Assembly (NCBI GenBank): GCA_002189035.1
Contig: NEEC01000016.1
Span: 1,550,001-1,614,000, forward strand
Origin: Utricularia gibba
Taxonomy: Eukaryota; Plantae; Magnoliophyta
Direction of reading: 5' to 3'
Length of the DNA: 64,000 bases
Numbering within the stretch: position 1 is the stretch's first letter; each line of letters starts with the position of its first letter. The notes under the pieces were generated by a model. It searched no databases and was not told the DNA's origin. It was given only the letters and a program-made list of their open reading frames with translations. Positions 1-57,503 of the stretch are shown one piece after another. The translations under genes were made by a program, and so were the position numbers.

Positions 1-790
1 TGTGTTCTTGATGTCATTTCTAGACTTTCATTCCATCGAAATCCAAAACGTACGGAGATTACCTAAAACCCAATATGGATTCCATGGTGGAGTATTGGGT
101 GTACACGCAGCACTGAAATACCGAATTCATTCATGTTCTTTGGAATGGCAATTATTGAGAGGCGGCCATACTTTTCAAATAGGGTCCATGAGTATTGAGA
201 TTTCTGACGAGTGTGTGGTCCTAATTATCTCAGCAGCCTCTGTCGTGTTTACACTATGTAAGAACAAGCAAAAAGGGGGGATGAATCTCTTGAAATGTGT
301 TCTTGATGTCATTTCTAGACTTTCATTCCATCGAAATCCAAAACGTACGGAGATTACCTAAAACCCAATATGGATTCCATGGTGGAGTATTGGGTGTACA
401 CGCAGCACTGAAATACCGAATTCATTCATGTTCTTTGGAATGGCAATTATTGAGAGGCGGCCATACTTTTCAAATAGGGTCCATGAGTATTGAGATTTCT
501 GACGAGTGTGTGGTCCTAATTATCTCAGCAGCCTCTGTCGTGTTTACACTATGTAAGAACAAGCAAAAAGGGGGGATGAATCTCTTGAAATGTGTTCTTG
601 ATGTCATTTCTAGACTTTCATTCCATCGAAATCCAAAACGTACGGAGATTACCTAAAACCCAATATGGATTCCATGGTGGAGTATTGGGTGTATACGCAG
701 CACTGAAATACCGAATTCATTCATGTTCTTTGGAATGGCAATTATTGAGAGGCGGTCATACTTTTCAAATAGGGTCCATGTGTATTGAGA
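1..790. repeat. Tandem repeat, 295-bp unit, about 2.7 copies (may extend left of the window)
   Basis: The unit tgtgttcttgatgtcatttc... restarts at 1, 296 and 591. Copies 1 and 2 give identical ORF translations. Copy 3 has a few substitutions and stops near 790. Confidence 0.95.
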
Positions 791-946
791 TAACAATATC
801 TGGATTTTAATGTTATATTATTTATTTTTTAGTGGAGTGATGGGATGGCACCTACCCATTTGCGCTCTTGATTATTGATTTCAAGTTTTTGTTCTATAAA
901 TAGCGAAGAGGCATTCGTGAGTGAGTGTGAGCTCCGCGATCTGAGA

Positions 947-1400
947 ATGGCTTCTGCCAGATTACTTCTCTTTGTCGGGCTCTTCTTGCTCATCGCTCTC
1001 CTCGCTTCCTCTGAGGTTGCTGCTGTAAGAAATTTGGCAGAGGCCTCCAACGCCAACACCCTCGATGCATGTAATGAAACAAAAAGAGCTTCTATTTGGT
1101 GTATGAACTCATTATCCTACTGCTACTGACTCATATATTGGTTTGGTGGGCTTTTTTCTTTTTCACTCAGCCAAACCTGGTGACGAGGTACACAGCCGTG
1201 GCGCAGTAGAGAGGACTGAGAAGTTTGGGTTTTATAGGAGGCCAATTCGTGGTGGAGGCGGCGGAGGAGGTGGTGGTGGGGTGGAGGCGGTGGTGGAGGT
1301 GGAGGTGGAGGCGTGGTGGAGGTGGAGGTGGTGGCGGTGGTGGTGGAGGAGGGGTGGCCGCCACCCTCACCTTGAATCTGGGGAGGAGTCCAAGAATTGA
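947..1400 (+). CDS. Secreted glycine-rich protein (GRP family, PF07172-type signal peptide), copy 1, 2 exons
   Basis: Exons 947-1070 and 1171-1400, joined by a phase-1 GT-AG intron. Signal MASARLLLFVGLFLLIALLASSEVAAVRNLAE has the GRP hallmark SSEVAAR.LAE. TATA at about 894. GGN-repeat tract 1251-1358; C-terminus ESGEESKN. Three 1-nt gaps in the G tract (1278-81, 1313, 1351-54) shift and then restore the frame; corrected, the tract is about 37 consecutive Gly. Confidence 0.85.
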
Positions 1401-1599: not shown

Positions 1600-2830
1600 A
1601 AATATAATATTGTATTAAATACCTTCTAAATATCTAAATATTTTTGTTATCAAATATTGATAATTTTCAAAAATAAAAAAAAAACTTATTTTTTTTCAAA
1701 TTATCTAGTAATGTAATTTCTTTCTTAGTAGATAAAATTTTTTTAATTATTTTTTGAAATTAGTTGTATAAAATTTAAGAATAGACACCCAATCAATTTT
1801 TCTCTTTTTGTTTGCTCTTCAAACATGTGAAAAAAAAATACATATTTTGGAAATTTGGAAGAGTGTTCGAGCGGGTGAACGCCAACCAAGCGATGGAGCC
1901 CGCTACACAGTCCAGTCGAATAATTGAAATCTTGTTTATCACAATTTTTTTAAAAAAAAATATTTTTTAATAAAAAGATCGTATGCAGGTTTTAAAAATT
2001 TGGATACGTGATTAGTCCCAGGAGCTAGCGATATCATGAAATTATCCTGAATTAATAAATAATTATCGTGGTTTAGAAACTAGAATAATAAAATGATTAA
2101 ATAAGATTTATTTTTAAAAAATTATCTTCACGCCAACCAATTTTGAAGACAGCTGTGACGTGGGTGTGATTTGCTCGAATTTCCTATCTATAAATGGACG
2201 AGAAGCATTCCCGAATGAGAGCAAGCTCAAACCATTCTCAAACATGGCTTCTTCTTCTTCTTCCAGAGTGCTTGTTTTCTTCTTGGTAGTGGCTTTCCTC
2301 ATTTCCTCTTAGGTTTCTGCTGCTAGGCAGCTGGCGGAGGGCACCACCTCCAACTCGCTCGGTTTATGTAATCCAGGCTTCCCCATAATACTCACAAAAT
2401 GTTTTCTGCAACCCTTCGTCTTATAATTTAAAACATAACTGGAATGCGGACTGGAAGCATTCTTTTTTTTGGTTGCTGATCGTTGTTTTGTTATTTACCT
2501 CAGCCGAGCTGGGAGAATGGATGAAGGCGGGCGTAGTGGAGGGATCTGATATCTATCTGTGCAACTGCAAAGTCGCCCAGTGCCGTTGTCCACCCCGCCC
2601 ACCGGTAGCGGCGGCCGCGGGTGAGCCCAGGAACTGATGAATGAAGAAGCTGCGTTTCTCAGTGTTGTTCTCCCTTTCAAGGAATAAAGCACGCAGTGCG
2701 AGTGTGTGTATTTGGGGGTGGTCTACAATGCTGTGTGTAGCGCCAGCCGCCAGGGCTATGTATGTATCTACATGCATTGTGTTTTTAATGTGATTCTCTG
2801 CTTGCCTGGTTATTACCTACGTTTACAACT
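1600..2830 (+). repeat. Local segmental duplication, partner of about 5800-7030 (promoter, GRP-type gene and 3' flank)
   Basis: Co-linear shared blocks in both copies, e.g. aatagacacccaatcaattt, gccaaccaagcgatgg, gtgattagtccca and aaagcacgcagtgcgagtgtgtgtatt. Confidence 0.85.
2244..2637 (+). pseudogene. GRP-type secreted Cys-rich peptide gene, copy 2, with a premature stop at codon 23
   Basis: Exons 2244-2367 and 2504-2637, with the same 124-nt exon 1 and phase-1 intron as copies 1 and 3. TAG at 2310-2312 where copy 3 has GAG. Exon 2 is open: SELGEWMKAGVVEGSDIYLCNCKVAQCRCPPRPPVAAAAGEPRN. Confidence 0.8.
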
Positions 2831-3031
2831 TGGATACATAACCCCGGCAGTTTTTGTAATGCTTCAGGTAGTTCACATGTTTATTAAAAATATATTTTTT
2901 ATCTATTATTATACAAAATATAAACTATTTTTAATAAAAATTAGCGTATGAATATAATATAAGAATAAAATTTGAAATAACTTCAATTTAAATTAATGAA
3001 TACGTAATGCAATACATAGACTAAACATAAT

Positions 3032-4620
3032 TGATGGGATACAAATCGGGTATAATCAAATGACTTCTGAAAAGATACCAAGAGATGTTCTGAGAAGATC
3101 GTGTCAATCGACTGAATGATGCAAATAAGAGGTACAGTCTGAAAAGCGACTGAATTATGGCATAGCATACGGCTGGTATCTAAAAAGTGAGATCGTATAG
3201 CAGGTGTAGAAAGCAACCGATATTAGCATAGATCTAGATTCGACCAGAGGGGGGCTCTTGGATAAAAAGAAGAAACCAACAAAAAAAAAAAAGAGGGAGA
3301 GGACTCTAGTGCTTGTATCCTCTTCTTGGTCATCTCTATCCAATGGAAATATTTTCCGACGAGTTCCGATAGCTCTGTGGTTTTTCCGTCTTCCGGCGAT
3401 TTTCACGTAAAAATCTTCGCTTACTCTTATTTCAACCAAACCAACCGTGAAAAACACAACTAAGTGTGATATTCCCGATTGCACTTATCACCCTAAAATC
3501 GGCCTTCCAACGAACTTCGAATTTACCCCAACATTTTGACGCCCACCGTGGGGCAGATCCACAACCCACTCAAGAAATCCACGAGAGTCAATCACTAAGT
3601 GTTGATGATGGCGGAAAATAGCATAGCCACCAACCCGATCCATGACGGAAGCGCTAGCGCACAAGACCTTGGCCCTATGATCACCAGCAGGGAAGAGCTA
3701 AAGGCCCTTCTAAGAAAATCCCCACCGATTTCAGGAAACCTTCAGGCCTCAACTCCAATGCCCAAGAGGGGACACCCAAAACTGCACCACGAGTGGAGAA
3801 GTGGCCCACAGTTCCGGAATACCCCTCAGACACAGAGATTGAGTCCGAAACTGAAGAGGAGATACTACGAAGGAAACGGCGTAACCAAGTCATATATGAG
3901 CCAAAAACTGATAGGGAAAACATGACTGGCGAAATCTTGGAAAAAAGGGAAGAAGAGCTGAAGAGAGAGTTAGACCAGATTCGCGAGAGGAGAAGACTTA
4001 TCGACAAACGGATGTCGTCAGGGAAAAGAGAGGGTAGGGGCTTCAGGGATGTTTTCGATCAGAACGTATCCACTGGGAAACGAGACGTTCTGGCCAATAT
4101 TGCTCTAGCTTTGAAGAATGGAGTTGAGGGAGCAGCTGGGACTACATCGCTGCACTTTGACCCCTTCTCAGACAATTTAGTCGAGAAAGAACCCGAGAGA
4201 GGATTTAGAGTCCCGAACGGATTACCCATGTATGACGGAAAAGGGGACCCCATATCACACGTAATCAACTTCGATATGAGGATGTTCATGGTTCGACATT
4301 TAGAAGCCATGAAGTGTAAGCTGTTTGCTTGCTCGCTCCAAAAGGGAGCAAAGACTTGGTTTAAACAGTTAGAACACGGCAGTGTGGCATCCTATCAAGA
4401 GTTAGTGCTGCTGTTCACTACCCGATACACTGTCAATATCAAAGCTCCACCTTCAAAGGCAGCACTATACTCTATTCGGTATGACCACCGAAAAGAGAGT
4501 TTGAGAAGATTCGTCGACTGATTTAACTGCCAAGCGCATGACGTCCAGCTGGATTTAAAGGAGAGGGTGGAGATAATGAAGCGGGCCTAGCCATACGAAA
4601 TGAACCTTTGATGGTATCAG
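3032..4620 (+). mobile_element. Truncated Ty3/gypsy element, Tat/Retand-like: LTR, PBS and gag
   Basis: The LTR-like segment ends ...accccaaCA at 3533 and is followed by TGACGCCCACCGTGGGGC, a near match to the plant tRNA-Lys PBS. ORF 3793-4521 has retrotransposon-gag motifs (YDGKGDPISH, KCKLFACSL, AKTWF). The 5' LTR start is approximate. Confidence 0.8.
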
Positions 4621-4699
4621 GAATATGCAGAAGCACCAAGGTAAGAAGAATTCTTATTGATCAAGGATCTTCCTGCAACAGAACTGGCCCGACCTTATT

Positions 4700-5177
4700 T
4701 CAGAGAGTCTCACCAAGTTTTGGGTTAGGGCCAAACTAAAACCTGATTACATAAAAATATGATTAACGTGGTCCTACCCCAATTATTCATAAGGTCGTGT
4801 TGGCCCTAATCGGCCCACGAACTTACCATATAATAAATAATTTTTTTAAAAAAATAAGTAAACATTAATATACATTTTAATATTATTTAAATAATCTATA
4901 GAAAAAAAATTTAAAATTATTATATAAATTATTAATTCATATTATCTATTCTTAAATTAAAATAATATATATAAAATGAATTTAAATTATTCAAAATATA
5001 TAATAATTATAATTATTATATATAAAAATTCTATTTTTTAATTGGACCTAAGGCCTTACGGGTTCAAGCCAAAAAACTCGACAATCTTTTGGGTCATCAA
5101 TGTATAGACCCAAGCCTAATGTTTTTTAGGGTCAGGCTAGGTAGGCCCACAGGTTTGGGCTTTAACTTTCATCCCTA
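4700..5177. mobile_element. Non-autonomous hAT-like element or MITE remnant
   Basis: Right end catcccta (reverse complement TAGGGATG, a hAT-type TIR). GGGCC/GGCCC-rich subterminal blocks flank an AT-rich core. The left TIR was not found. Confidence 0.4.
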
Positions 5178-6461
5178 GCCACAAGTGATAATTTGGACAA
5201 ATCAAATGGATTGAATGGAATCGTAAATCATTAGATGCCAAATAAGTGAATGTTTGAGGAGAAAATCATTTTGCATTATATGCATTACTTGTAACCCTTT
5301 CTCTTTGGCTTCTTAATGAAACCATTTTTCTGGTGCGCTTTTGTAGTTTATGGTTTTTCCATTCTGATGCTTCTCATAAAAAACATTGGCATCTTTCATC
5401 GTTTTATGCGTTAATCGAAAACAAAATCTTAACCGTTAAAATGTGTATATGATTTGGGCTCATACCCAGAAATCGGATTGACTTAAAAAACCGATTTCAA
5501 TGCACAAGAAACTTCAGATGTTATTTTTGAAATTTTTTCAAATATATTTTTTATGATTGTTTAAAAAAAATAATTATAAATACTCTATGACAGTTTATGA
5601 TATGTGAGTTTAAGTCAAGTTTAATGAAGATTAATAAAATTATCTTTTATTATCAATTATTATAAATTATGTATTCTAGACATACCTTCGAAACATAATA
5701 TTATTATTAATATATATCTCAAAGAAAATTTCAATTTTAATTGTATTATACTTGCTTATATAAAAATAAATAGGTTAAATATATTAATAATTATAATAAA
5801 ATATAATTACCCTCGAAATATCTAAATATTTTTATTAATTATTACTGATTTATTTTTAAAAAATGTATAATAAAAAAACACTTTTTTCTAAATATCTAGT
5901 AATGTAATCCTTTTTATTAGATGTACTTTTAAAAAAATTTCAAATTAATTGTATAAAATTTCTGAATAGACACCCAATCAATTTTTTTTCTTTTCTTTTT
6001 CTTTTGCTATTTAAACATGTGAAAAAAAATGCGTATTTTGGAAATTTAGAAAAGTCTCCCGGAGGGCTGAGAGGCTGAATGCCAACCAAGCGATGGGGCC
6101 CGCTACACAGTCGTCGAATAATTGAACTCACGTTTACCACAATGCTTTTTTTTTATTAAAAAATATTTTTAATAAAAAAGAATCGCAATGCAGCTTTTAA
6201 AAATTTTGATACGTGATTAGTCCCAGCCCCCAGGAGATAGCGATATCATGAAATTATCCTGAATTAATAAATAATTATAGTGGTTTAGAAATTAGAGTTT
6301 TAAAATGATTAAATAATATTTATTTTTTAAAATTTATCTTCACGCCCACCAATTTTGAAGACAGCTGTGAGTGTGACGTGGGTGCGGTTTGCTCGAATTT
6401 CCTTTCTATAAATAGACGAGAAGCATTCCCCATTGAGGGCAAGCTTAAACCATTCTCAAGC

Positions 6462-6838
6462 ATGGCTTCTTCTTCTTCTTCCAGAGTGCTTGTTTTGTTC
6501 CTGGTAGTGGCTTTCCTCATTTCCTCTGAGGTTTCTGCTGCTAGGCAACTGGCGGAGGGCACCACCTCCAACTCGCTCGATGCATGTAATCCAGGCTTCC
6601 CCATACTCGCACAATGTTTTCTGCCACCATTCGGCTTATAATTTAAAACAGAACTGGAATGTTTGCTTTGTTTTGGTTACTGATCTGTGTTTTGTTATTT
6701 ACCTCAGCCACGCTGGGAGAATGGGTCAAGCAGGGCATAGAGGCATCTGATACTTATCTGTGCAACTGCAGAGTCCCCTCCTGCCATTGTCGTCCCCGCC
6801 CACCGGTAACGGCGGCCGAGGGTGAGCCCAAGAACTGA
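6462..6838 (+). CDS. GRP-type secreted Cys-rich peptide precursor, copy 3, intact, 84 aa
   Basis: Exons 6462-6585 and 6708-6838; donor GTAATC, branch CTGAT at about 6680, acceptor ttacctcAG; TATA at about 6407. Protein: MASSSSSRVLVLFLVVAFLISSEVSAARQLAEGTTSNSLDASTLGEWVKQGIEASDTYLCNCRVPSCHCRPRPPVTAAEGEPKN. Confidence 0.85.
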
Positions 6839-6969
6839 TGAATGAAGAAGCTGCTTTTCTGATTGTTGTTCTTCTCCCTTTCAAGAAATAAAGCACGCAG
6901 TGCGAGTGTGTGTATTGGGGGGTGGCCTACACTACTGTGTGTAGCGCCAGCTGCCCGGGCTATGTATCT

Positions 6970-8725
6970 ACGTGCATTACGTACATTGTGTTGTTAATGT
7001 AATTCTGGGCTTACCTGGTTATTACACAATTCCGTGCGGTTTTAGTTGTTTTCACTACACGATGACCAGAACTGTCGGAATATTATCGGGCGGCTGTTCT
7101 CGGCGTAACGTGGTGGGGTCCTAACTAAAACAAAAAAAAGTGGTGCCCGTCCTCGTGTCGGCTGAATAATCAACGTCTCTGTCACCTAGTGGATGAGAAG
7201 AAGAAGAAGAAGCGATAAGGAGCATGGGCGTGTGTGGACGTCCTTATTTTCCTGTTTTTTTTTTACGTAAATAATTCCAGTTATATTATTGAGAAACATT
7301 ATTAAAAAACTTTACTACTAAATACGGCTATACTCTTAAAAACTTGAAAATTTAGAATCAATTTTAATTTTTAAAAAGATGCAAAATCTCAACATTTATT
7401 TCCAAATAGAGTCACAATTTGTGCATAAATTTAATAAAAATAATTTCGAAAAAGATGGGATAAGCCATAGGTTCGATGATGAATCAACGGCCCATTGGGC
7501 ATAATTACAAGATAAATGCTGGAAAAATTGGACTATCCACTTGGGCTTCTTGATATTCATTTATGGATTTATGGTTTCATCTTTTGACTCAAGATGTGAG
7601 TATAAGTTCGATTCAACATATTATGGGTTGAACTTATCAAGTCAACATAAAAAATTATAATTCAATAAATACAGATCGATCGATTGATATACTACACATA
7701 TTCTGGATTACGAGTTGCGTAGGATTATTGCACATTTTATATATACTAACACAAAATAAACTTAATTTATAATTACTGACTCAATTGATTGGGATTACCA
7801 ACTCATTTGAAAAAAAACGCATACTTTTTTGTTGTTGAGCAAAATATATTATGAATCCATCTCATTCGCATTTTTTTAAGATTACAAGTAACAAATTCGA
7901 TCAGTGACATGTCAATTTGACACATATCTGAGTTGATCTAGAAGTGGATATTTCATTATGTATGTTGTTGCAAGCATGTAAACTCCTTTGAATGTATTGC
8001 ATGTTGTTTTCTTAATAAATTTTAATTTAGAAAAATATAAAACATAAATAAGCATAGTACGAGTGTCGATCTCAAAGAATTGATTTTTGTGAAAAGTGTT
8101 TTGTACTAAATATTTACAAATTATCACGAGTTTATAAAAGTGGGGATTTGAAATATAAAAATAAAAGATGTACGTGCATTGTACTGTTAATGTGATTCTG
8201 GGCTTGCCTGGTTATTACACAGTCCCGTTCCGTTTTGGTTGTTTTCACTACACGATGACCAGAACTGTCGGAATACTATGGGGCGGCTATTCTCGGCGTA
8301 ACGTGGTGGGGTCCTAACAGAAAAAAAAAATGGTGGCCGTCTTTGTGGCGGCTGAATAATCAACGTCTCTGTCACCAAGTGGATGAGAAGAATAAGCGAT
8401 GAGGAGCATAGGCGTGTGTGGACGTACTTATTTTCCTTTATAACAAAAATAATTACTAAATACGGTTACACTTCAAAAAAACTTTGAAAAATTATAATTA
8501 ATTTTTATTTTTAAAAAGGTGCAAAATCCCAAAATTTCCTTCCAAATAGAGTCATAATTTGTTTTTAAATTTAATAAAAATAATTTCAAAAAAGATGGGA
8601 TACTTAATAGGCTCCATGATGACGAATCAACAGGCCATTGGACTTAATTACAAGATAAATGCTGGAAAAATTGGATTATCCACTTGGGCTTGTTGATGCT
8701 CATTTATGGGTTCATGGTATCATCT
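6970..8725 (+). repeat. Direct duplication of the GRP 3' flank (about 6970-7580 and about 8170-8725)
   Basis: Near-identical blocks in both copies, e.g. cactacacgatgaccagaactgtcggaat, ggctgaataatcaacgtctctgtcacc and caagataaatgctggaaaa. Confidence 0.9.
7995..8130 (-). mobile_element. 3' end fragment of an Athila-like LTR
   Basis: Its reverse complement aligns by eye with 43330-43464 (acaaaacacttttc...gagatcga.act.gtactatgct...acatgcaa), up to the LTR terminus. Confidence 0.7.
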
Positions 8726-14169: not shown

Positions 14170-17100
14170 TGAAGATATGTTGTGCAGTTGTTTGGAGCAA
14201 CGTTGGTGCTTGAGCTTCGGAAGTAGATTTAAGAAAAAAACAGTTTGCAACAAGTAAGACTTGGGAGTATTTAAACTACTTCCTATGAAGGAGTCGACCG
14301 TTGCGGTAAATAGTGGGCTTCATATGATGATTTGGATCTTTGGGCTTTTCTAGGTTGATGTTGGGCCGCATTCTCTAGTCGACCCAGGGTTCACTCTCCT
14401 CCAGAATCGCAGATAGACGCTGGTGAGCTGAGTTCTTCGCGACGGAGTGCTGATGCAGCACAATCTAACACTCCCCCTTGCTGCGAAGCTCTGTGTTTTC
14501 AGTGGGGCATTCCTTCATACCTATCTAGTCTCTTAGGTCAGCAAATCGCTTGGGCGCTAGGAATTTCGTAAGTAGGTCAGCAGCCTGTTCTTCAATCCAA
14601 ATATACTTGAACGCGATTTCTCCATTCGATACAAACTCTCTAAGAGCATGATAACGAACTCTGATATGTTTGGTCCTCCCGAATTGCGTTGGATTTTCGC
14701 CTAGGGCAATTGCTGACTTATTATCTATCCAAAGTGTGGTAGCACCGTGGGTTGGTAGGTCAAGATCTTCCAGAATTTTCCTGAGCCATATGGCATGTTT
14801 TGCAGCTTCCACTCCAGCAATGTATTCCGCTTCAATGGACAATAGCACAGTGATGTCTTGCTTCCGGGATGCCCAGCTGAAGACTCCCGATCCGAATGTG
14901 AAGAGGTAATCGCTTGTAGTCCTTGAATCCTCAAAACTACCTGCATAGTCGGAGTTAGTAAATTCAGATAAATTCATACCTGTGCCCTTTTTGAATGCTA
15001 GACCATAGGCTATCGTTGAGTTCAGGTATTTGATGATCTGCTTGGCCGTGTCCATATGATGTTTGTGAGGATTCCGCAAGTATCGGGAGAGGTAGCTGAC
15101 ATAAAAACAAATGTCAGGTCTGGTAGCAGATAGGTACATAAGCGAACCGATCAAGCTACTGAAGATTTTATCATTTGCAGAAGCTTCTTCGTCGACTTGG
15201 TCAGACTTCATGGCAGGTACACTAACAGGTTTCGCATTACTCATGTTGTATTTTTTTATGAGATCAGTAGTATATTTGCATTGGCTTAGGTAGATACAAT
15301 CAGGAGTGTGCTTGATCTCTAGCCCCAAGAAGTAACTCATTGTTTGTAGATCGCTCATCTCAAATGTAGTCATGAGTTGCTGTTTTTTCTTGAATCAGCA
15401 GATAGTGGGCATTTCCAGTAAAAAGAAGGTCGTCGACATAGAGAGACACAATGAGGTACTTCGTTGCCTTCTTCAACGTATAGAGTGTGATGTCATTTTT
15501 GCTCCTCTGAAAGCCCCTTGAGTGAAAATGAGAGTCGATTTTGGTATACCAGGCCCGTGGTGCTTCCTTTAAACCGTATAGGGCCTTATGGAGTAGCAGG
15601 ACTTTGTTTTCTGCTCCTTGTTTGACAAATCCGGGAGGCTGTTGAACATATACTTCCTCTTGTAGGGCCCCATTCAAGAAGGCGCTCTTGACATCCAGGT
15701 GAAAAATGTCCCAATGATTACAAGCAGCCAATGCTATCAGTAATTTGATGGTATCAAGATGTGCAACAGGGGCAAAGGTCTCACTGAAATCAATCCTAGG
15801 TATTTGAGAATACCCCTGAGCTACTAGACGAGCTTTCAGCTTGTTCATGGTCCCATTTGCATTTAGCTGTGTGTGGAATATCCATTTCACACCTATTATT
15901 CGACTATTGGGAGGCTTGAATACTAATTCCCATGTGCCATTCTTTTCAATGGAATGTATTTCAGATTCCATGATGGCTTTCCAACCCGGATCCTGGTGGG
16001 CAGAACTCCAGTCAAGAGGTTCCTAAGCAACTAAGCAGCGATCATATATCTGGCTGATGTATCAGTAACCTTGCGCAGGTGCTTCCCCATCTTCAATATA
16101 GGAATCAGTGTCGACTGGTTGCTGGTTAGTGGTGTAGCTGCTGGAGACGTTGAGCTGGTGACGGGAGTAGGAGAATTATCCCTTAAATCATCATCTGTAT
16201 CAGGAAAAGGCTCTTTAAACAGGTCATTCCATGTATAGGAAGCAGGTATATTTTCTGGAGACCAATCCAGCATTTTTGTTCATCTACTAAGACAGATTAT
16301 GATTTTTTGTGTCTCCAAATGCAGTACTCGATATGCCTTAGAGACATCGCTATACCCTAAGAAAATCCCAGTATTTGCCCATTTAACCAGTTTTCCATGG
16401 CGTTTTTCTGGAGGCACATAAATGTAATAGAGACTTCCAAAAACGTGCAGATGTTTCACTTGAGGAGGTGTCCCATACCAAGCTTCATATGGTGTTTTGT
16501 TAGGTAAAGAGGAGGTAGCACACCAGTTCAGAATATAGATTGAGGTATTTGCTGCTTCGCCCCAAAAATAGCTGGGTAAGCTTTTTTGAAACAGGAGACA
16601 CCGGCTCATGTTCATGATGGTCTTGTTCTTACGTTCTGAGGTTCCATTCTGCTGCGGAGTGTACGGGGTAGTTAACTCATGCTTGATCCCTTGAGACTCA
16701 CATAGGGTAATCAGCTCGGTGGGTGAGTATTCTCTACCGTTATCAGTTCTGAGTTTAACAATCCGTTCTTTGGTTTCATTTTCAATTGCAGATTTGAAGA
16801 GCTGGAAATAGTGAAGGACTTGAGATCGATTCTTCCAGAGGAAGATCCGGGAAAATTTGGTAAAATCATCAATGAACAGTAGGAAGTACCGGTTGCCACT
16901 TGGAGTTGCACAGTTCATGGGGCCACACACATCAGAGTGCACAAGTTCCAATTTTTGAGAGCTTTTCCAGGTTCGGGATTCGAACGGAAATTTGCTCATC
17001 TTTCCTTGCTGACATATGGAGCATACAGCTGTGTCATGTTTCAGTTCTGAGATCCCATCAACCAGCTTGTGCCGCTGCATGTGAAGGTTTGTTGACATAT

Positions 17101-18874
17101 GTGCCCAAACCGTTGATGCCAAGTTTCTGTCGTTAGGCTGCTTAGACATATGGCATTCCTGTCACTGGGAGAAAAATTGATAGGATATATTCTGTGATGT
17201 CACTCTGCCTTAAAGAGTACTTTTCCTATTGAGTCTTTAGCCGTGATGGAAGTACTGTCGTGTGTATAGTTAATATTTTGATCCTGCAATTGGCCATAAC
17301 TGATAAGATTGTGATGTGCTCTTGGCACATAGTACACGTCTCTAATGATTTTTCCAGATATGGAGATATTGCCGATTCCAGCAGGGATGAGTTTTTCTTG
17401 TCCAGCAGCTTGCAGAATTCTTATTTCTGATAGAGATTCAGGGTTTGAAAGCAGGTAATATCATAAGTCAGGTGGTTGCTGCAGCCACTGTCTAGGTACC
17501 ATTGCTTGTCTTTTGTGCATGATTCTTCATTTGCAGATAGACTGGCGTGAGTTTCAGTAATAGCAAGAACCATATCGCTCATATTCTGGGAGATTTCGGA
17601 GATACCAGCTACTACTAATAACTCTTTTGCCTTTCTTTTTTTCAAGACAGACCCCCTCAATATGTCCTGTGGCAGAGCAATGGGTACACTTGTTTGAAGG
17701 ATTCCAGAAGCAGTCTTTGTTGAGGTGATTTTTTCCTTTACAGAATTGGCAAGGTGGGTGAGGTCCTCTTTTCTCCGTTTTCGTCCCTTGATTTTGGCTT
17801 GATCTATAGTTCATGTATGCAGCTTGGAGGATTTTTTCTTGGGGCTTCTCTTGTTCTTCTAGCATATTGATCCTTTGTTCTTCACCCTATAGAGTGTTCA
17901 GTAATTCAGATGGTGTCAAATTTGTGAGACTCCTTGTAGCAATAAGAGCACTCACTACCGGGCTGAACTTGGAGGGCATACTTGTGCATATTTTGTTAAT
18001 AACTCTCTCGTCATCGACTGTTCCTCCTAGTAGCTTGATTTTGATAATAGGCTTGTTGAGTTTGTCTGCAAATGACTGAATAGAGTCTGAGTTTGATATT
18101 TTCACCAAGTCAAATTCCCTCCAAAGGTTTAGTCTTTCTGATTGTCTGGAATTTTCGGTTCCTGAAAATTCCACTTCTAGTATTTTCCAAGCTTCCCTTG
18201 CTGTTTCGCAGTTTACAATCATCAAAAACATTTCATCTGTAAGTGAGCCATGAATTGCAACCAGCACCTGCGAGTTAGCCATTGTCTCTTCTTTGGTGAG
18301 TTCTCTTGTTTTTCCTTCTTTGTCTGTGGGTGGATCTTTGGTTACTATGACCCATAAACCAAGAGCTTGCATGTAGCATTTCATTTTAGCTGCCCAAATA
18401 AGATAGTTCTTTCCATCGAACGGGGGTGGTTGTAGCGGTATGAAATTGTTTGTTTTGTTGCTCATGTTGTTCCTGCGTTGTTAGTGAGATAAAGATGAAT
18501 GTAAGGATGTGTGTCGTCGTGTGGTGTGCTATACCTGATTTATTGTTCGAAATTGGGCTCTGATACCATGAAGATATGCTGTGCAGTTGTTTGAAGCAAC
18601 GTTGGTGCTTGAGCTTCGGAAGTAGATTTAAAAAAAAACAGTTTGCAACAAGTAAGACTTGGGAGTATTTAAACTACTTCTTATGAAGGAGTCGACCATT
18701 GCGGTAGATAGTGGGCTTCATATGATGATTTGGATCTTTGGGCTTTTCTAGGTTGATGTCGGGCCGCATTCTCTAGTCGACCCAGGGTTCGGTCTTCTCC
18801 AGAATCGCAGCATCACATAGATGCTGGTGAGCTGAGTTCTTCGCGACGGAGTGGTGATGCAGCACAATCTAACA
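14170..18874 (-). mobile_element. Full-length Ty1/Copia LTR retrotransposon, frameshifted gag-pol
   Basis: LTRs at 14170-14470 and 18569-18874 (TG...CA, about 96% identical by eye). TSD TCCCG at 14165-69 and 18875-79. PBS TGGTATCAGAGC at 18557-68 and PPT next to 14471. Domains in Copia order: gag (FDGKNYLIW), Zn knuckles, protease (WYLDSGCSNH), integrase (HSDVCGP, TDNGREY, PQQNGTSERKN), RT (YVDDLL) and RNase H (TKHIRVRYH). Confidence 0.97.
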
Positions 18875-20085: not shown

Positions 20086-21224
20086 GGATATCAACATTGG
20101 AAGACGCATGTAAATTACTTGGGACGAATTATTTCCTGGCCGGCCGGAGCTATGCCCTTAGGAGGATGGGCGCCTTTAGTTTAGTTCCCTTGGAAGACCG
20201 CCTTTTCGAAAAGGAGCGACGCCTGCGTCCCTATTTATGCGTAATTTATTGATTCGGAATAGGTGTTTTTTTTAAAAAAAAATTCAATTTAATTTTTTAT
20301 TAAATGTATTTTATAATACTTGATTTGTAAAATACTCACGTAATTTTTTCAATCATGTTAATGAAATTTTTTCTGTCATAGTTAACTGTGTGTTTAAATT
20401 TTTTCATATATTTAAATTATATATAATTTTAATTATAATATGTTAAATAAAAATCAATCAAATATTAAATAAATATTTTATAGATAATATAAGTCAATGA
20501 GATTATTTATGATTTCTCAAAGAGGTGATGTGGCTAAATAGAAAAATTCTATTAATCTTATATTAGTTATTGTTCCCATAAGATTATAATGTAAAATTGT
20601 AAATGTTAAGTATTAGAAATGAATAATAGCGTATAAGCCAATCATGAATCTTAATATTTGATAACAAAGTGAAACTTGAGCTTGTGCCATAGTGAAGGTA
20701 AATTCAACGAACAAGTTGAATGTCTAAGAAGGAGATAACGTAAATTTAAAAATCTAATGACGGAATAGTTTTAATTTGATTTTATAATAATTTTATTTAA
20801 ATGAATATTTGATAATAATTATAAATTAAATCAATATTTTAATGTATAGTTAATTTTAAACTTATTCTATACATTTATTGAAAATAAAAAGAAATAATAT
20901 ATTTTATTTTAAATTTTAATATATAAAAATTCATTTATCAAATATATTAAAAATATTTTATTTAATTATATAATTAGAATTCAGATGAATTATTGTTATT
21001 ATTATTATTATTTTAGTGAGGAGGAGGGAATAGGGATGTTGGGGTTGTCAACGTCAGCAGTCTTTCTCTCCCAGATATCTCTGTGATCGCCGAATCCCGA
21101 CTCCCATGTGCCCCACGCCTCTCCTTCCTCCTGTTCCTTCCTTCTTCTTTATATATTGAGCACCCCCGTTTTCCGAATCGCAACTACTGTTGTTTTAATT
21201 GGTATTCTAGCCAGCTTACAACGC

Positions 21225-22053
21225 ATGGCGGCGCCTAATGACGACGGCGGTAGCGGCGGCGGCGGATCAGTAGCCGGCCGTCAGACGAGCACAAGGTGGA
21301 CGCCAACGGCGGAGCAGATTCGGATTCTCAAGGATCTTTATTACAACAATGGCGTACGGTCCCCGACGGCAGAGCAGATTCAGAGGATCTCCGCGAAGCT
21401 GCGGCACTACGGTAAGATCGAAGGCAAAAACGTCTTCTACTGGTTTCAGAACCATAAGGCTCGTGAGCGCCAGAAGAAGCGCTTCACTTCCGTCCCCCCT
21501 CCGCCTCTCCCTCCCCCGCCGCACTCTTTCTCCGATCATCTCGCCACCGCCGCCAAGCTCAACGCACCCTTTTCGTCTTCAGGTTTACACACATTTCTTT
21601 TTTTTTTTCACCTCCTCCGTGTTCTTACGTTTTCTCCCTGTAGGTGGATTCGGAGGTCCCTTAGCCATGGAGATGAAGTTCAAAGTAAGCTGAAGAACAA
21701 CGCATTATCAAAATAACAAATCTTCATCTTTTTCTTCTCATAGTGCATGCTTCTCTCGACAGGAGTTCTGCGTCACTCCGGGAGGCGTTTGTACTCCCCA
21801 GAGCTTGGCATGGAACCCCTTCTCCTCCTCCTCCGCGTGCTTCCCTCCGCCGGCAAGGGAGATCGAAACACTGCCGCTGTTCCCGATCCAGGATGAAATG
21901 GCGTGGAAGTTGGTCCCTGAGGGCGGCGCGTCGAGTGTCCCCGGCGAGGGCGCGTCACTGGAGCTCAGCCTGAGCTCCTCCTCCGCCTCCTGGTACCATG
22001 ATGAAGCATGTCGTCTTCCAAATCCGGCCTTGAAACCCCATGCCCACAGTTGA
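21225..22053 (+). CDS. WUS: WUSCHEL homeobox transcription factor, about 229 aa
   Basis: Exons 21225-21582, 21644-21684 and 21763-22053. Homeodomain [61 protein letters not shown] has the WUS-specific extra Y. Also AMEMKF, WUS-box TLPLFP and EAR-like SLELSL. Confidence 0.96.
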
Positions 22054-56485: not shown

Positions 56486-57503
56486 ATGGAGTGGCAAAAG
56501 CAACCGCCGCCGCCGCCGCAGCAGCCGGAGGATCCGGGTGGCGGTGTGTTTGTGAAGGTCATGACCGACGAGCAGATGGAAGTTCTGCGCAAGCAGATTG
56601 CAGTTTACGCCGCCATTTGCGAGCAGCTCGTGGAGTTGCATAAATCCCTTACTTCTCACAACGATCTTGCAGGTACGGAATCCAGGATGTAAATTGAATT
56701 AGCTCCATTTTTTTTTTTTTTGTCGCTGAAGCGCAATCCCTGTCTGTGTTTCAATTGAAAACGCTGCTTATTTTTTGGATTAGGAATGAGGTTGGGAAAT
56801 ATGTATTGTGATACGTTGATTGCATCGGGGACGCACAAAATTACTGGTAGACAGCGGTGGACTCCCACAGCGATGCAACTTCAGATTCTGGAGCGCATGT
56901 TTGATCAGGGAATTGGAACCCCAAGCAAGCAGAAGATCAAGGAAATAACTGGTGAATTGTCACAGCATGGCCAGATTTCTGAAACCAATGTCTATAACTG
57001 GTTCCAGAATCGGCGAGCTCGGTCGAAAAGGAAGCAGCAGTCTACTCCTTCAAACAAGGAAGAATCAGAGGTGGATACTGAAGTTGAATCTCCCACTGAG
57101 AAGAAAGCTAAGCCTCCAGAGTTTCAAGCTCACCACGCGCTAACGTCATCTGCAGGCGATCTCTGCTTTCAGGATCATTCATTTCATTCCGTGGATACTC
57201 TCAATGGGAAGATAGACTCTATTATGTCTCCAGAAGGCAGCTCAAAGTTCGGTGACATTCTTGGGCAAATGCCCTTCTATGGGAGCACGCTGTCCGGTTC
57301 AAGTAACTGTTTCATCTTGACAAGTTGCTTTCTTTTCCTAAAACATAGCTTTATCTGCTTCAATTTTCATCTTTGTTCTCTTTTCTTCGTGTTCAACTCA
57401 CACTTTCTGTTTTAAAGGCGCAGGGATAGATCAGATAATGGGGAAGATGGAAGTTCAAGGAAATTATAATTATTTGCTACAAGATGGCTATAGCATGGAC
57501 TGA
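56486..57503 (+). CDS. WOX13: WOX13-clade homeobox transcription factor
   Basis: Exons 56486-56672, 56784-57302 and 57424-57503. WOX13 motif [30 protein letters not shown]. Homeodomain [34 protein letters not shown]...[19 protein letters not shown]-terminal GKMEV. Confidence 0.96.

What the first reader, a model, noticed from the sequence alone, without database searches (positions are those of the whole stretch)
2244..6838. GRP-scaffold genes recoded into secreted C-x-C-x4-C-x-C peptides (candidate undescribed hairpin defence or signalling peptides)
Seen: copies 2 and 3 keep the GRP exon 1, phase-1 intron and EPKN/EPRN tail of the neighbouring Gly-rich gene, but exon 2 has no Gly tract. Instead it encodes YLCNCRVPSCHCRPRPP or YLCNCKVAQCRCPPRPP. 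The ORF track misses this because splicing is required. Known: C-x-C-x4-C-x-C is the Cys spacing of the two-disulfide beta-hairpin in protegrin-1, and plant class-II GRPs normally end in a different, CC-containing Cys domain. Inference: an acidic pro-region, a cationic Cys core with PRPP and an acidic tail suggest a processed antimicrobial-like or metal-binding peptide that arose from a GRP scaffold. Function is not shown.
Basis: partly seen in the sequence, partly recalled or inferred. Interest (0 to 1): 0.8.

Follow-up and report, generated by a model that had tools for sequence, protein, structure and literature searches.

The report
Secreted four-cysteine peptide from GRP gene
A plant gene that keeps the secretion leader of a glycine-rich cell-wall protein family but carries a short four-cysteine peptide is real, spliced as predicted and expressed; its twin copy is broken and its function is untested.

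Summary
Copy 3 (6462-6585 / 6708-6838, + strand) is a genuine two-exon gene. Transcript contigs from four RNA runs join 6585 to 6708 (GT..AG) with no mismatch. It encodes an 84-aa precursor: a GRP-type signal peptide and leader, then a 42-aa exon 2 with the core YLCNCRVPSCHCRPRPP (C-x-C-x4-C-x-C) and no Gly tract.

Copy 2 (2244-2637) has the same build.

Kinship with the neighbouring Gly-rich gene (947-1400) rests on:
- exon 1 (79% over 81 nt);
- the core promoter and 5'UTR;
- an identical 124-nt exon 1 with a phase-1 intron;
- 10 of the last 12 nt before the stop.

The rest of exon 2 shows no detectable similarity.

No relative of exon 2 turned up in Pfam, PDB, 1.84 billion representative proteins (a database shown here to hold many plant proteins), metagenomes or papers.

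The Cys spacing differs from the class II GRP Cys domain. It equals that of protegrin and also that of the CopY/Mac1 Cu/Zn site. The secreted product has net charge -1, which does not suit a cationic antimicrobial peptide unless it is processed. AlphaFold gives a low-confidence small beta-sheet.

Verdict: a lineage-restricted secreted Cys peptide derived from the GRP family, modestly interesting, function unknown.

The parts
6407..6414 (+). TATA box (TATAAATA) of copy 3, inside a 53-nt core-promoter/5'UTR block shared with copy 1
   Evidence: Sequence. Local alignment of 5' flanks of copy 1 and copy 3 scores 21 against 9.8 +/- 1.7 in shuffles.
6462..6585 (+). Copy 3 exon 1 coding part (124 nt): signal peptide (about residues 1-26, predicted cut after VSA) and leader ARQLAEGTTSNSLDA; ends in a phase-1 split codon
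   Evidence: Translation. Hydrophobic core. Weak Pfam GRP PF07172 N-terminal match, 19.5 bits, E 0.0015. 79% identity over 81 nt to copy 1 exon 1. Covered by RNA contigs.
6586..6707 (+). Copy 3 intron, 122 nt, GT..AG, phase 1
   Evidence: Skipped in contigs of 4 RNA runs.
6708..6838 (+). Copy 3 exon 2 coding part, stop included: 42 residues with no Gly tract, ending in EPKN
   Evidence: Translation. RNA contigs match 100%. No Pfam, PDB or protein-database relative.
6755..6805 (+). Cys core YLCNCRVPSCHCRPRPP (residues 58-74; Cys60, 62, 67, 69)
   Evidence: All four Cys, the YL, the N, the V and PRPP are conserved in copy 2. This block has the highest pLDDT of the model, 78.
6839..7044 (+). Copy 3 3'UTR, as far as the RNA contigs reach
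   Evidence: contigs end at 7008-7044.
2244..2367 (+). Copy 2 exon 1 (124 nt), 94% identical to copy 3 exon 1, with an in-frame TAG
2310..2312 (+). Premature stop codon TAG (codon 23) in the signal peptide of copy 2; copy 3 has GAG here
2504..2637 (+). Copy 2 exon 2: open frame with core YLCNCKVAQCRCPPRPP (2554-2604), one extra codon relative to copy 3, ends in EPRN
   Evidence: 84% nucleotide identity to copy 3 exon 2, lower than the intron (89%) and the flank (89%).
947..1400 (+). Copy 1: neighbouring GRP-type gene (exon 1 947-1070, intron 100 nt, exon 2 1171-1400). Its Gly-codon tract (1249-1357) changes frame twice as assembled; the protein ends in ESKN
   Evidence: Pfam GRP N-terminal match, 19.4 bits; GGT/GGA tandem tract.
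3793..4521 (+). Retrotransposon gag fragment between copies 2 and 3
   Evidence: Pfam Retrotrans_gag, 26.3 bits.
8171..8437 (+). Orphan duplicate of the 3' end and downstream flank of copy 3 (matches 6978-7253, 88%). No coding part is attached; it is the remnant of a further duplication

Best explanation
Copy 3 is a lineage-restricted offshoot of the tandemly arrayed secreted glycine-rich protein (Pfam GRP, PF07172) genes. It keeps the family's promoter core, signal-peptide and leader exon, phase-1 intron position and last four codons. The Gly-repeat cargo of exon 2 has been replaced, or has diverged beyond recognition, into a 42-residue Cys-containing domain.

Shown: the mRNA is made and spliced at 6585/6708, and it is abundant in at least one sample.

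Inferred:
- The leader directs the 84-aa precursor into the ER and is cut after about Ala26, giving a 58-aa apoplastic product.
- In the oxidising secretory pathway the four Cys form two disulfides, most simply Cys60-Cys69 and Cys62-Cys67. These pin a hairpin around the RVPS turn, which packs against an upstream strand (GEWVKQ) to make a small beta-sheet.
- The product acts outside the cell, at the wall or membrane surface, as a defence or recognition protein. This is how the Cys-rich tails of class II GRPs act: LsGRP1 C-terminus is antimicrobial, Crip21 is a receptor ligand, and AtGRP3 binds WAK1.
- Because the product is slightly acidic, a binding or ligand role seems likelier than membrane lysis.

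Copy 2 is a transcribed pseudogene of the same type, made by a local duplication now about 11% diverged at silent sites.
For: - Splice junction and expression: (4 runs, 0 mismatches; depth 1458 in X1).
- Intact 84-codon frame with a good start context.
- GRP ancestry of the 5' part: exon 1 z = 18 against shuffles, 79% over 81 nt, promoter block score 21 against 9.8 +/- 1.7, equal 124-nt exon 1 and intron phase, Pfam GRP N-terminal match for both genes, and 10 of 12 nt before the stop.
- Signal peptide: a 12-residue hydrophobic core followed by a small-residue VSA motif.
- Cys core conserved between copies that differ at 14 of 42 aligned exon 2 residues (33%) and by a one-codon indel.
- AlphaFold models of both copies give the same topology: strands 4-8/15-19, or 4-11/14-20, plus a bridge at the residue between the last two Cys. 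That is the register that puts C1 opposite C4 and C2 opposite C3.
- Precedents for extracellular activity of GRP Cys-rich tails: PMC7411634, PMC7576778.
- A conserved leader with a divergent mature peptide is a known pattern in NCR peptides (PMC6056668).
Against: - No protein-level evidence exists; translation, secretion, disulfides and activity are all untested.
- No orthologue was found, so long-term purifying selection cannot be shown.
- Exon 2 dN/dS between the copies is 1.77 and not distinguishable from 1 (Fisher p 0.59). One of those copies is dead.
- The structure models are of low confidence (pLDDT 67, pTM 0.38; four of five models for copy 2 fall below 51). Their only alignment was the two paralogues.
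- The X1 contig with the very high depth carries 19 unmatched letters in place of the start codon region. It may be a low-complexity assembly join or may come from another locus.
Confidence: 0.55

Rival explanations
1. This is a young, effectively neutral by-product. A duplicated GRP gene lost its Gly tract. It is still transcribed from the inherited strong promoter, and the remaining open frame with four Cys has no selected function.
For: - The sister copy is already dead (TAG at 2310-2312).
- Exon 2 is the most diverged part of the duplicated unit, 84% against 89% for intron and flank.
- dN/dS is 1.77 and not different from 1.
- No relative appears in any database searched, although the protein database holds thousands of plant proteins.
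- A 43-codon open frame is not improbable by chance.
Against: - All four Cys and their flanking residues are kept between copies that differ at a third of exon 2 residues.
- The only indel in exon 2 is in frame.
- The mRNA reaches high depth in one run.
- Faster change in the mature part than at silent sites is also what diversifying selection on secreted defence peptides produces.
Confidence: 0.25
2. This is a secreted metal-binding peptide. The C-x-C-x4-C-x-C cluster, with a His between the last two Cys, binds Cu(I) or Zn(II) through thiolates as in CopY and Mac1. It buffers or delivers metal in the secretory pathway or the apoplast.
For: - The spacing is identical to the CopY C-terminal motif, and the residues are similar (CNC-IPGQ-CEC against CNC-RVPS-CHC). 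In CopY a 14-mer is sufficient for Cu(I) and Zn(II) binding (PMC12648655).
- CXCX4CXC is also reported for fungal copper sensors.
Against: - The known examples are cytosolic, where thiols stay reduced. This protein has a signal peptide and would fold in the oxidising ER.
- Plant metallothionein spacing differs (CxCxxxCxCxxCxC, PMC5430376), and metallothioneins lack signal peptides.
- There is no homology, only a 10-residue pattern.
Confidence: 0.1
3. This is the first reader's version: a precursor that is cut to release a cationic protegrin-like two-disulfide beta-hairpin antimicrobial peptide.
For: - The Cys spacing equals that of protegrin-1 (established knowledge, not tested with a tool here).
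- The core carries +3 and a His, flanked by acidic segments.
- The AlphaFold bridge register is compatible with a C1-C4 / C2-C3 ladder.
Against: - No dibasic or other recognisable processing site borders the core.
- The unprocessed product has net charge -1.
- A charge of +3 over 17 residues is weak for a membrane-active hairpin.
- The models make the upstream acidic segment part of the sheet.
- There is no cathelin-type or other antimicrobial-precursor domain.
Confidence: 0.1

Closest known systems
Class II plant glycine-rich proteins (AtGRP3, LsGRP1, Cuscuta CrGRP with its Crip21 epitope)
   Same: Both have a secreted precursor with the same type of signal peptide and leader (Pfam GRP N-terminus), a small gene in a tandem GRP array, and a Cys-containing C-terminal part that in known members carries the biological activity (antifungal LsGRP1 C-terminus, PMC7411634; receptor ligand Crip21, PMC7576778).
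   Different: There is no glycine-rich repeat at all. There are four Cys spaced 1, 4, 1, instead of six Cys with CC pairs (C-x4-CC-x8-C-x2-CC in Crip29). Exon 2 has no sequence similarity to any GRP found.
Protegrin-type two-disulfide beta-hairpin antimicrobial peptides (animal cathelicidins)
   Same: The C-x-C-x4-C-x-C spacing is the same, and a hairpin register with a C1-C4 / C2-C3 ladder is possible.
   Different: There is no cathelin precursor and no evidence of release. The charge is far lower. The source is a plant, so any likeness would be convergent.
CopY / Mac1 CxCx4CxC Cu(I)/Zn(II) binding motif
   Same: The Cys spacing is identical and the core composition is close (CNC...P...C-x-C).
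   Different: Those are cytosolic DNA-binding regulators. This protein is a secretory-pathway product with no DNA-binding domain.
Legume NCR and other fast-evolving secreted Cys-rich peptide families
   Same: They share a two-exon build, a relatively conserved signal-peptide exon with a rapidly diverging four-Cys mature exon, tandem duplication with pseudogenes and transposon neighbours, and high tissue-restricted expression (PMC6056668).
   Different: The Cys framework and the leader differ. The leader here is the general GRP one. No nodule link is shown.

Membership tests
Secreted GRP family (Pfam PF07172) / class II GRPs | N-terminal signal peptide and leader of the GRP type | tested here: met
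   Pfam GRP positions 4-29 match exon 1 (E 0.0015). DNA homology to the neighbouring Gly-rich gene's exon 1 and promoter. Caveat: this part of the model is largely a signal peptide (PMC2912341).
Secreted GRP family (Pfam PF07172) / class II GRPs | Glycine-rich repeat domain, [GG(X)3GG]n in class II (PMC5852109) | tested here: not met
   Exon 2 is 7% Gly (copy 3) and 9% Gly (copy 2) and has no repeat.
Secreted GRP family (Pfam PF07172) / class II GRPs | Score at or above the Pfam gathering threshold (30 bits) | tested here: not met
   Exon 1 scores 19.5 bits and exon 2 has no match. The spliced full-length protein was not scanned as one piece.
Class II GRPs | C-terminal six-Cys domain with CC pairs | tested here: not met
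   Crip29 from PMC7576778 has Cys gaps 4, 0, 8, 2, 0. Copies 2 and 3 have 1, 4, 1.
Protegrin-like beta-hairpin antimicrobial peptides | C-x-C-x4-C-x-C spacing | tested here: met
   One search gives the spacing here. The protegrin-1 spacing comes from established knowledge, not from a tool.
Protegrin-like beta-hairpin antimicrobial peptides | Cathelin-type precursor and release of a strongly cationic 16-18-mer | tested here: not met
   No Pfam domain in exon 2. No basic processing site. Core +3 and whole secreted product -1.
Protegrin-like beta-hairpin antimicrobial peptides | Two-disulfide antiparallel hairpin fold | tested here: inconclusive
   AlphaFold pLDDT is 67. A single bridge at the residue between Cys3 and Cys4 is compatible with the hairpin, but the main predicted hairpin involves the upstream strand. 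Foldseek found no match.
CopY/Mac1-type Cu/Zn thiolate motif | CxCxxxxCxC motif | tested here: met
   compared with the CopY peptide of PMC12648655.
CopY/Mac1-type Cu/Zn thiolate motif | Reducing (cytosolic) location and attached DNA-binding domain | tested here: not met
   A signal peptide is present and no other domain is found.
CopY/Mac1-type Cu/Zn thiolate motif | Metal binding | not testable with these tools
   Needs titration of the peptide with Cu(I) and Zn(II).
Plant metallothioneins | CxCxxxCxCxxCxC clusters and no signal peptide | tested here: not met
   The spacing differs (PMC5430376) and a signal peptide is present.

The most novel reading that the evidence does not exclude
Within a tandem GRP array the glycine-repeat cargo was replaced by a new 30-residue disulfide-pinned beta-sheet domain with a protegrin-like Cys ladder. 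This created a lineage-specific, highly expressed apoplastic defence or recognition peptide of a Cys framework not described in plants. It would be a traceable case of a new secreted peptide class born on an old leader exon.
Probability: 0.3. Interest if true: 0.6.

Novelty: new variant of a known kind. Interest (0 to 1): 0.42.

Why it matters
Plants hold many small secreted Cys-rich peptides that gene finders miss, and how new ones arise is poorly documented. Here the parent family (secreted GRPs), the retained parts (promoter, leader exon, intron phase, last codons) and the replaced part can all be pointed to. The product is expressed.

If the peptide proves to be folded and active, it would add a new Cys framework to plant defence and signalling peptides. 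It would also give a clean example of cargo swapping on a conserved secretion leader.

If it proves neutral, it shows how easily strong GRP promoters expose new open frames.

Tried and rejected
- Word-index protein search with exon 2 and with exon 1: nothing. A shared 5-mer requirement probably explains the exon 1 blank.
- Full HMMER scan of 1.84 billion representatives with exon 2: two hits. Both are repetitive unrelated proteins, a bacterial or phage-like repeat protein and a tandem-repeat ORF, and were rejected.
- Control with the WUSCHEL ORF: 2583 plant hits, so the database does cover plants. The transcript ORF known from the RNA runs is itself absent, so unannotated small genes can be missed.
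- ESM Atlas: best score 0.79, bacterial transposase-like clusters, rejected as noise.
- Pfam and PDB sequences: nothing for exon 2.
- Foldseek against AFDB clusters and PDB: nothing.
- JGI metagenome scan with the two-copy alignment (one search had failed on length): no confirmed hit.
- Exact look-up of the genomic 59-aa ORF: not on record.
- Paper search for the peptide strings: only chance hits.
- Tracing exon 2 to the Gly-rich exon by DNA or protein alignment, including other frames: no signal except the last 12 nt.
- Positive selection: dN/dS is above 1 but not significant.
- Not done: the spliced 84-aa protein was not submitted to tools, because it has no reference form.


Full report
**What is in the sequence**

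The window is plant nuclear DNA. It also holds a WUSCHEL-type homeobox gene, a second WOX-type homeobox ORF, a kinase ORF, Ty1-copia-like pol/integrase ORFs and a retrotransposon gag fragment.

At its left end lie three small two-exon genes on the + strand.

- **Copy 1** (947-1070 / 1171-1400) has a GRP-type leader and a GGT/GGA-rich tract (1249-1357). As assembled the tract slips through all three frames: ten Gly in frame, then a run of Val, Glu, Ala, Trp and Arg codons. The protein ends in ESKN.
- **Copy 2** (2244-2367 / 2504-2637) and **copy 3** (6462-6585 / 6708-6838) have no Gly tract in exon 2. They encode YLCNCKVAQCRCPPRPP and YLCNCRVPSCHCRPRPP, and end in EPRN and EPKN.
Codon 23 of copy 2 is TAG (2310-2312), inside the signal peptide, where copy 3 has GAG. 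No downstream start would restore a leader. As assembled, copy 2 is a pseudogene.

**Is the gene real?**

Yes, for copy 3. RNA runs hold about 55% of the sampled words of 6300-7100, which fits a transcript without promoter and intron.

Contigs of four runs were laid on 6200-7100. They come from four studies and four organism labels. Each contig joins 6585 to 6708 (GT..AG, 122 nt skipped) with no other difference, and they span about 6454 to 7008-7044. Word depth in run X1 is 1458, against 4-13 in the others, so expression is high in some sample.

One caveat: the X1 contig starts with 19 letters that do not match the window upstream of 6466. This lies at a (TCT)n run and may be an assembly join. 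The other three contigs include the ATG.

Copy 2 is also present in RNA runs, but only of organism A (word share up to 0.44).

**Relation to the GRP neighbour**

Copy 2 and copy 3 are one duplicated unit: 84% identity over 1.1 kb, with a gag fragment inserted between them.

The evidence that links copy 1 to copy 3:

| Feature | Result |
|---|---|
| Exon 1 | 79% over 81 nt; z = 18 against shuffles |
| Core promoter / 5'UTR block (53 nt, around the TATA box) | score 21 against 9.8 +/- 1.7 |
| Exon 1 length and intron phase | 124 nt and phase 1 in both |
| Last 12 nt before the stop | 10 of 12 identical; about 1e-4 at an anchored position |

The intron, the rest of exon 2 and the 3'UTR are not similar above shuffles.

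Exon 1 of both genes matches the N-terminal part of Pfam GRP (PF07172) at 19.4-19.5 bits, below the 30-bit cut-off. That part of the model is mostly signal peptide, and PMC2912341 warns that such matches can mislead. The DNA-level evidence is therefore the stronger argument.

In sum, both ends of the gene are GRP-derived. How the middle arose cannot be traced.

**Divergence between the two Cys copies**

| Region | Identity, copy 2 vs copy 3 |
|---|---|
| Exon 1 | 94% |
| Intron | 89% |
| 5' flank | 89% |
| 3'UTR | 86% |
| Exon 2 | 84% |

All 14 differing exon 2 codons change the amino acid, and there is one in-frame codon indel. By the Nei-Gojobori method, dN is 0.223 and dS is 0.126, a ratio of 1.77, but Fisher p is 0.59.

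The four Cys, YL, N, V and PRPP are invariant. This fits either diversifying selection on a secreted peptide or relaxed constraint. With one copy dead, the data cannot decide.

**Search for relatives**

Exon 2 has no match in any of these:

- Pfam;
- PDB sequences;
- the word-indexed 5.8-billion protein set;
- a full HMMER pass over 1.84 billion representatives, which gave two spurious repeat proteins;
- the ESM Atlas;
- JGI metagenomes;
- AFDB clusters or PDB by fold;
- papers, by peptide string.

As a control, the WUSCHEL ORF of the same window retrieved 2583 plant proteins. The database therefore covers plants, and the blank means there is no annotated relative. The 84-aa ORF seen in the RNA contigs is itself absent from that set. 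Unannotated small genes can be missed, so absence from other genomes is not shown.

**Comparison with known Cys patterns**

- **Class II GRPs.** They are defined by a signal peptide, [GG(X)3GG]n repeats and a C-terminal Cys-rich motif (PMC5852109). The Cuscuta class II peptide Crip29 printed in PMC7576778 has Cys gaps 4, 0, 8, 2, 0. Copies 2 and 3 have 1, 4, 1.
- **Protegrin-1.** It has the same 1, 4, 1 spacing. This comes from my own knowledge, not from a tool.
- **CopY.** Its Cu(I)/Zn(II) site has the same spacing, and its 14-mer ECNCIPGQCECKKQ is sufficient for metal binding (PMC12648655). Fungal copper sensors carry the pattern too.

Spacing alone therefore does not indicate a hairpin peptide.

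**Properties and fold**

- The leader has a 12-residue hydrophobic core and a VSA motif, so cleavage after about Ala26 is likely. This is an inference; SignalP was not available.
- The remaining 58 residues have net charge -1. The segment before the core is -3, the 17-residue core +3 with one His, and the tail -1.
- No basic processing site flanks the core.
- AlphaFold on exon 2, using the two-paralogue alignment, gives pLDDT 67 and pTM 0.38. Strands fall at residues 4-8 and 15-19, with a bridge at residue 26, the His between Cys3 and Cys4.
- With copy 2 as target the topology is the same: strands 4-11 and 14-20, bridge at 27. Four of the five models there fall below pLDDT 51.
- The bridge register would put C1 opposite C4 and C2 opposite C3.
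- The models make the upstream acidic segment a strand of the same small sheet, not a propeptide.

These models are weak hints only.

**Reading**

Most likely (0.55) this is a functional or recently functional secreted disulfide-stabilised small protein. It arose in the GRP array by replacement of the Gly cargo and acts extracellularly, like the Cys-rich tails of class II GRPs (PMC7411634, PMC7576778).

The rivals are:

- a neutral by-product of a decaying GRP duplicate (0.25);
- a secreted metal-binding peptide (0.1);
- a processed protegrin-like antimicrobial hairpin (0.1).

Earlier notes of this scan mention an eight-gene GRP-scaffold array that runs into this window from upstream. They also mention other GRP-type Cys peptides without Gly tracts in the same genome, and GRP copies out of frame probably through assembly errors. 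I did not test any of these; they are leads only. It holds at the codon level.

**Verdict**

The GRP ancestry is supported for the ends of the gene. The hairpin-defence function is not supported beyond a shared Cys spacing. This is a new variant within the well-known class of fast-evolving plant secreted Cys peptides and is of moderate interest.

Noticed in passing
window 1-791: A 295-bp unit is repeated 2.7 times at 99% identity, directly upstream of the copy 1 promoter. Each unit carries a 119-aa open frame.
   Followed up: partly
window 1249-1357: The Gly-codon tract of copy 1 shifts through all three reading frames and returns to the original frame before the ESKN tail. The cause is either decay or one-base assembly errors in a low-complexity tract.
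   Followed up: partly
window 8171-8437: An isolated 88% duplicate of the 3' end and downstream flank of copy 3 sits here with no coding part upstream. It is the remnant of a further duplication of the unit.
   Followed up: partly
window 3300-4700: A retrotransposon gag fragment (Pfam Retrotrans_gag) lies between copies 2 and 3. It is broken by stops downstream.
   Followed up: partly
window 14525-18465 (- strand): Long ORFs whose translations look like Ty1-copia gag, integrase and reverse transcriptase (read by eye; not scanned against Pfam). They are split into several ORFs, so the element is probably degenerate.
   Followed up: no
window 21108-21716 (+): First exon of a WUSCHEL orthologue: homeodomain, 82-94% identical to WUS of many eudicots, with most top-ranked hits from legumes. 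A second homeobox ORF lies at 56786-57415 and looks WOX13-like by eye; only its homeodomain was confirmed.
   Followed up: partly
run X1 contig, 5' end (before window 6466): The very deep X1 transcript contig begins with 19 letters (AACCCATCTTCTGCTTCCT) that do not match the window and contain no ATG. This is either a join at the (TCT)n run or a second locus or allele with a different 5' end.
   Followed up: no
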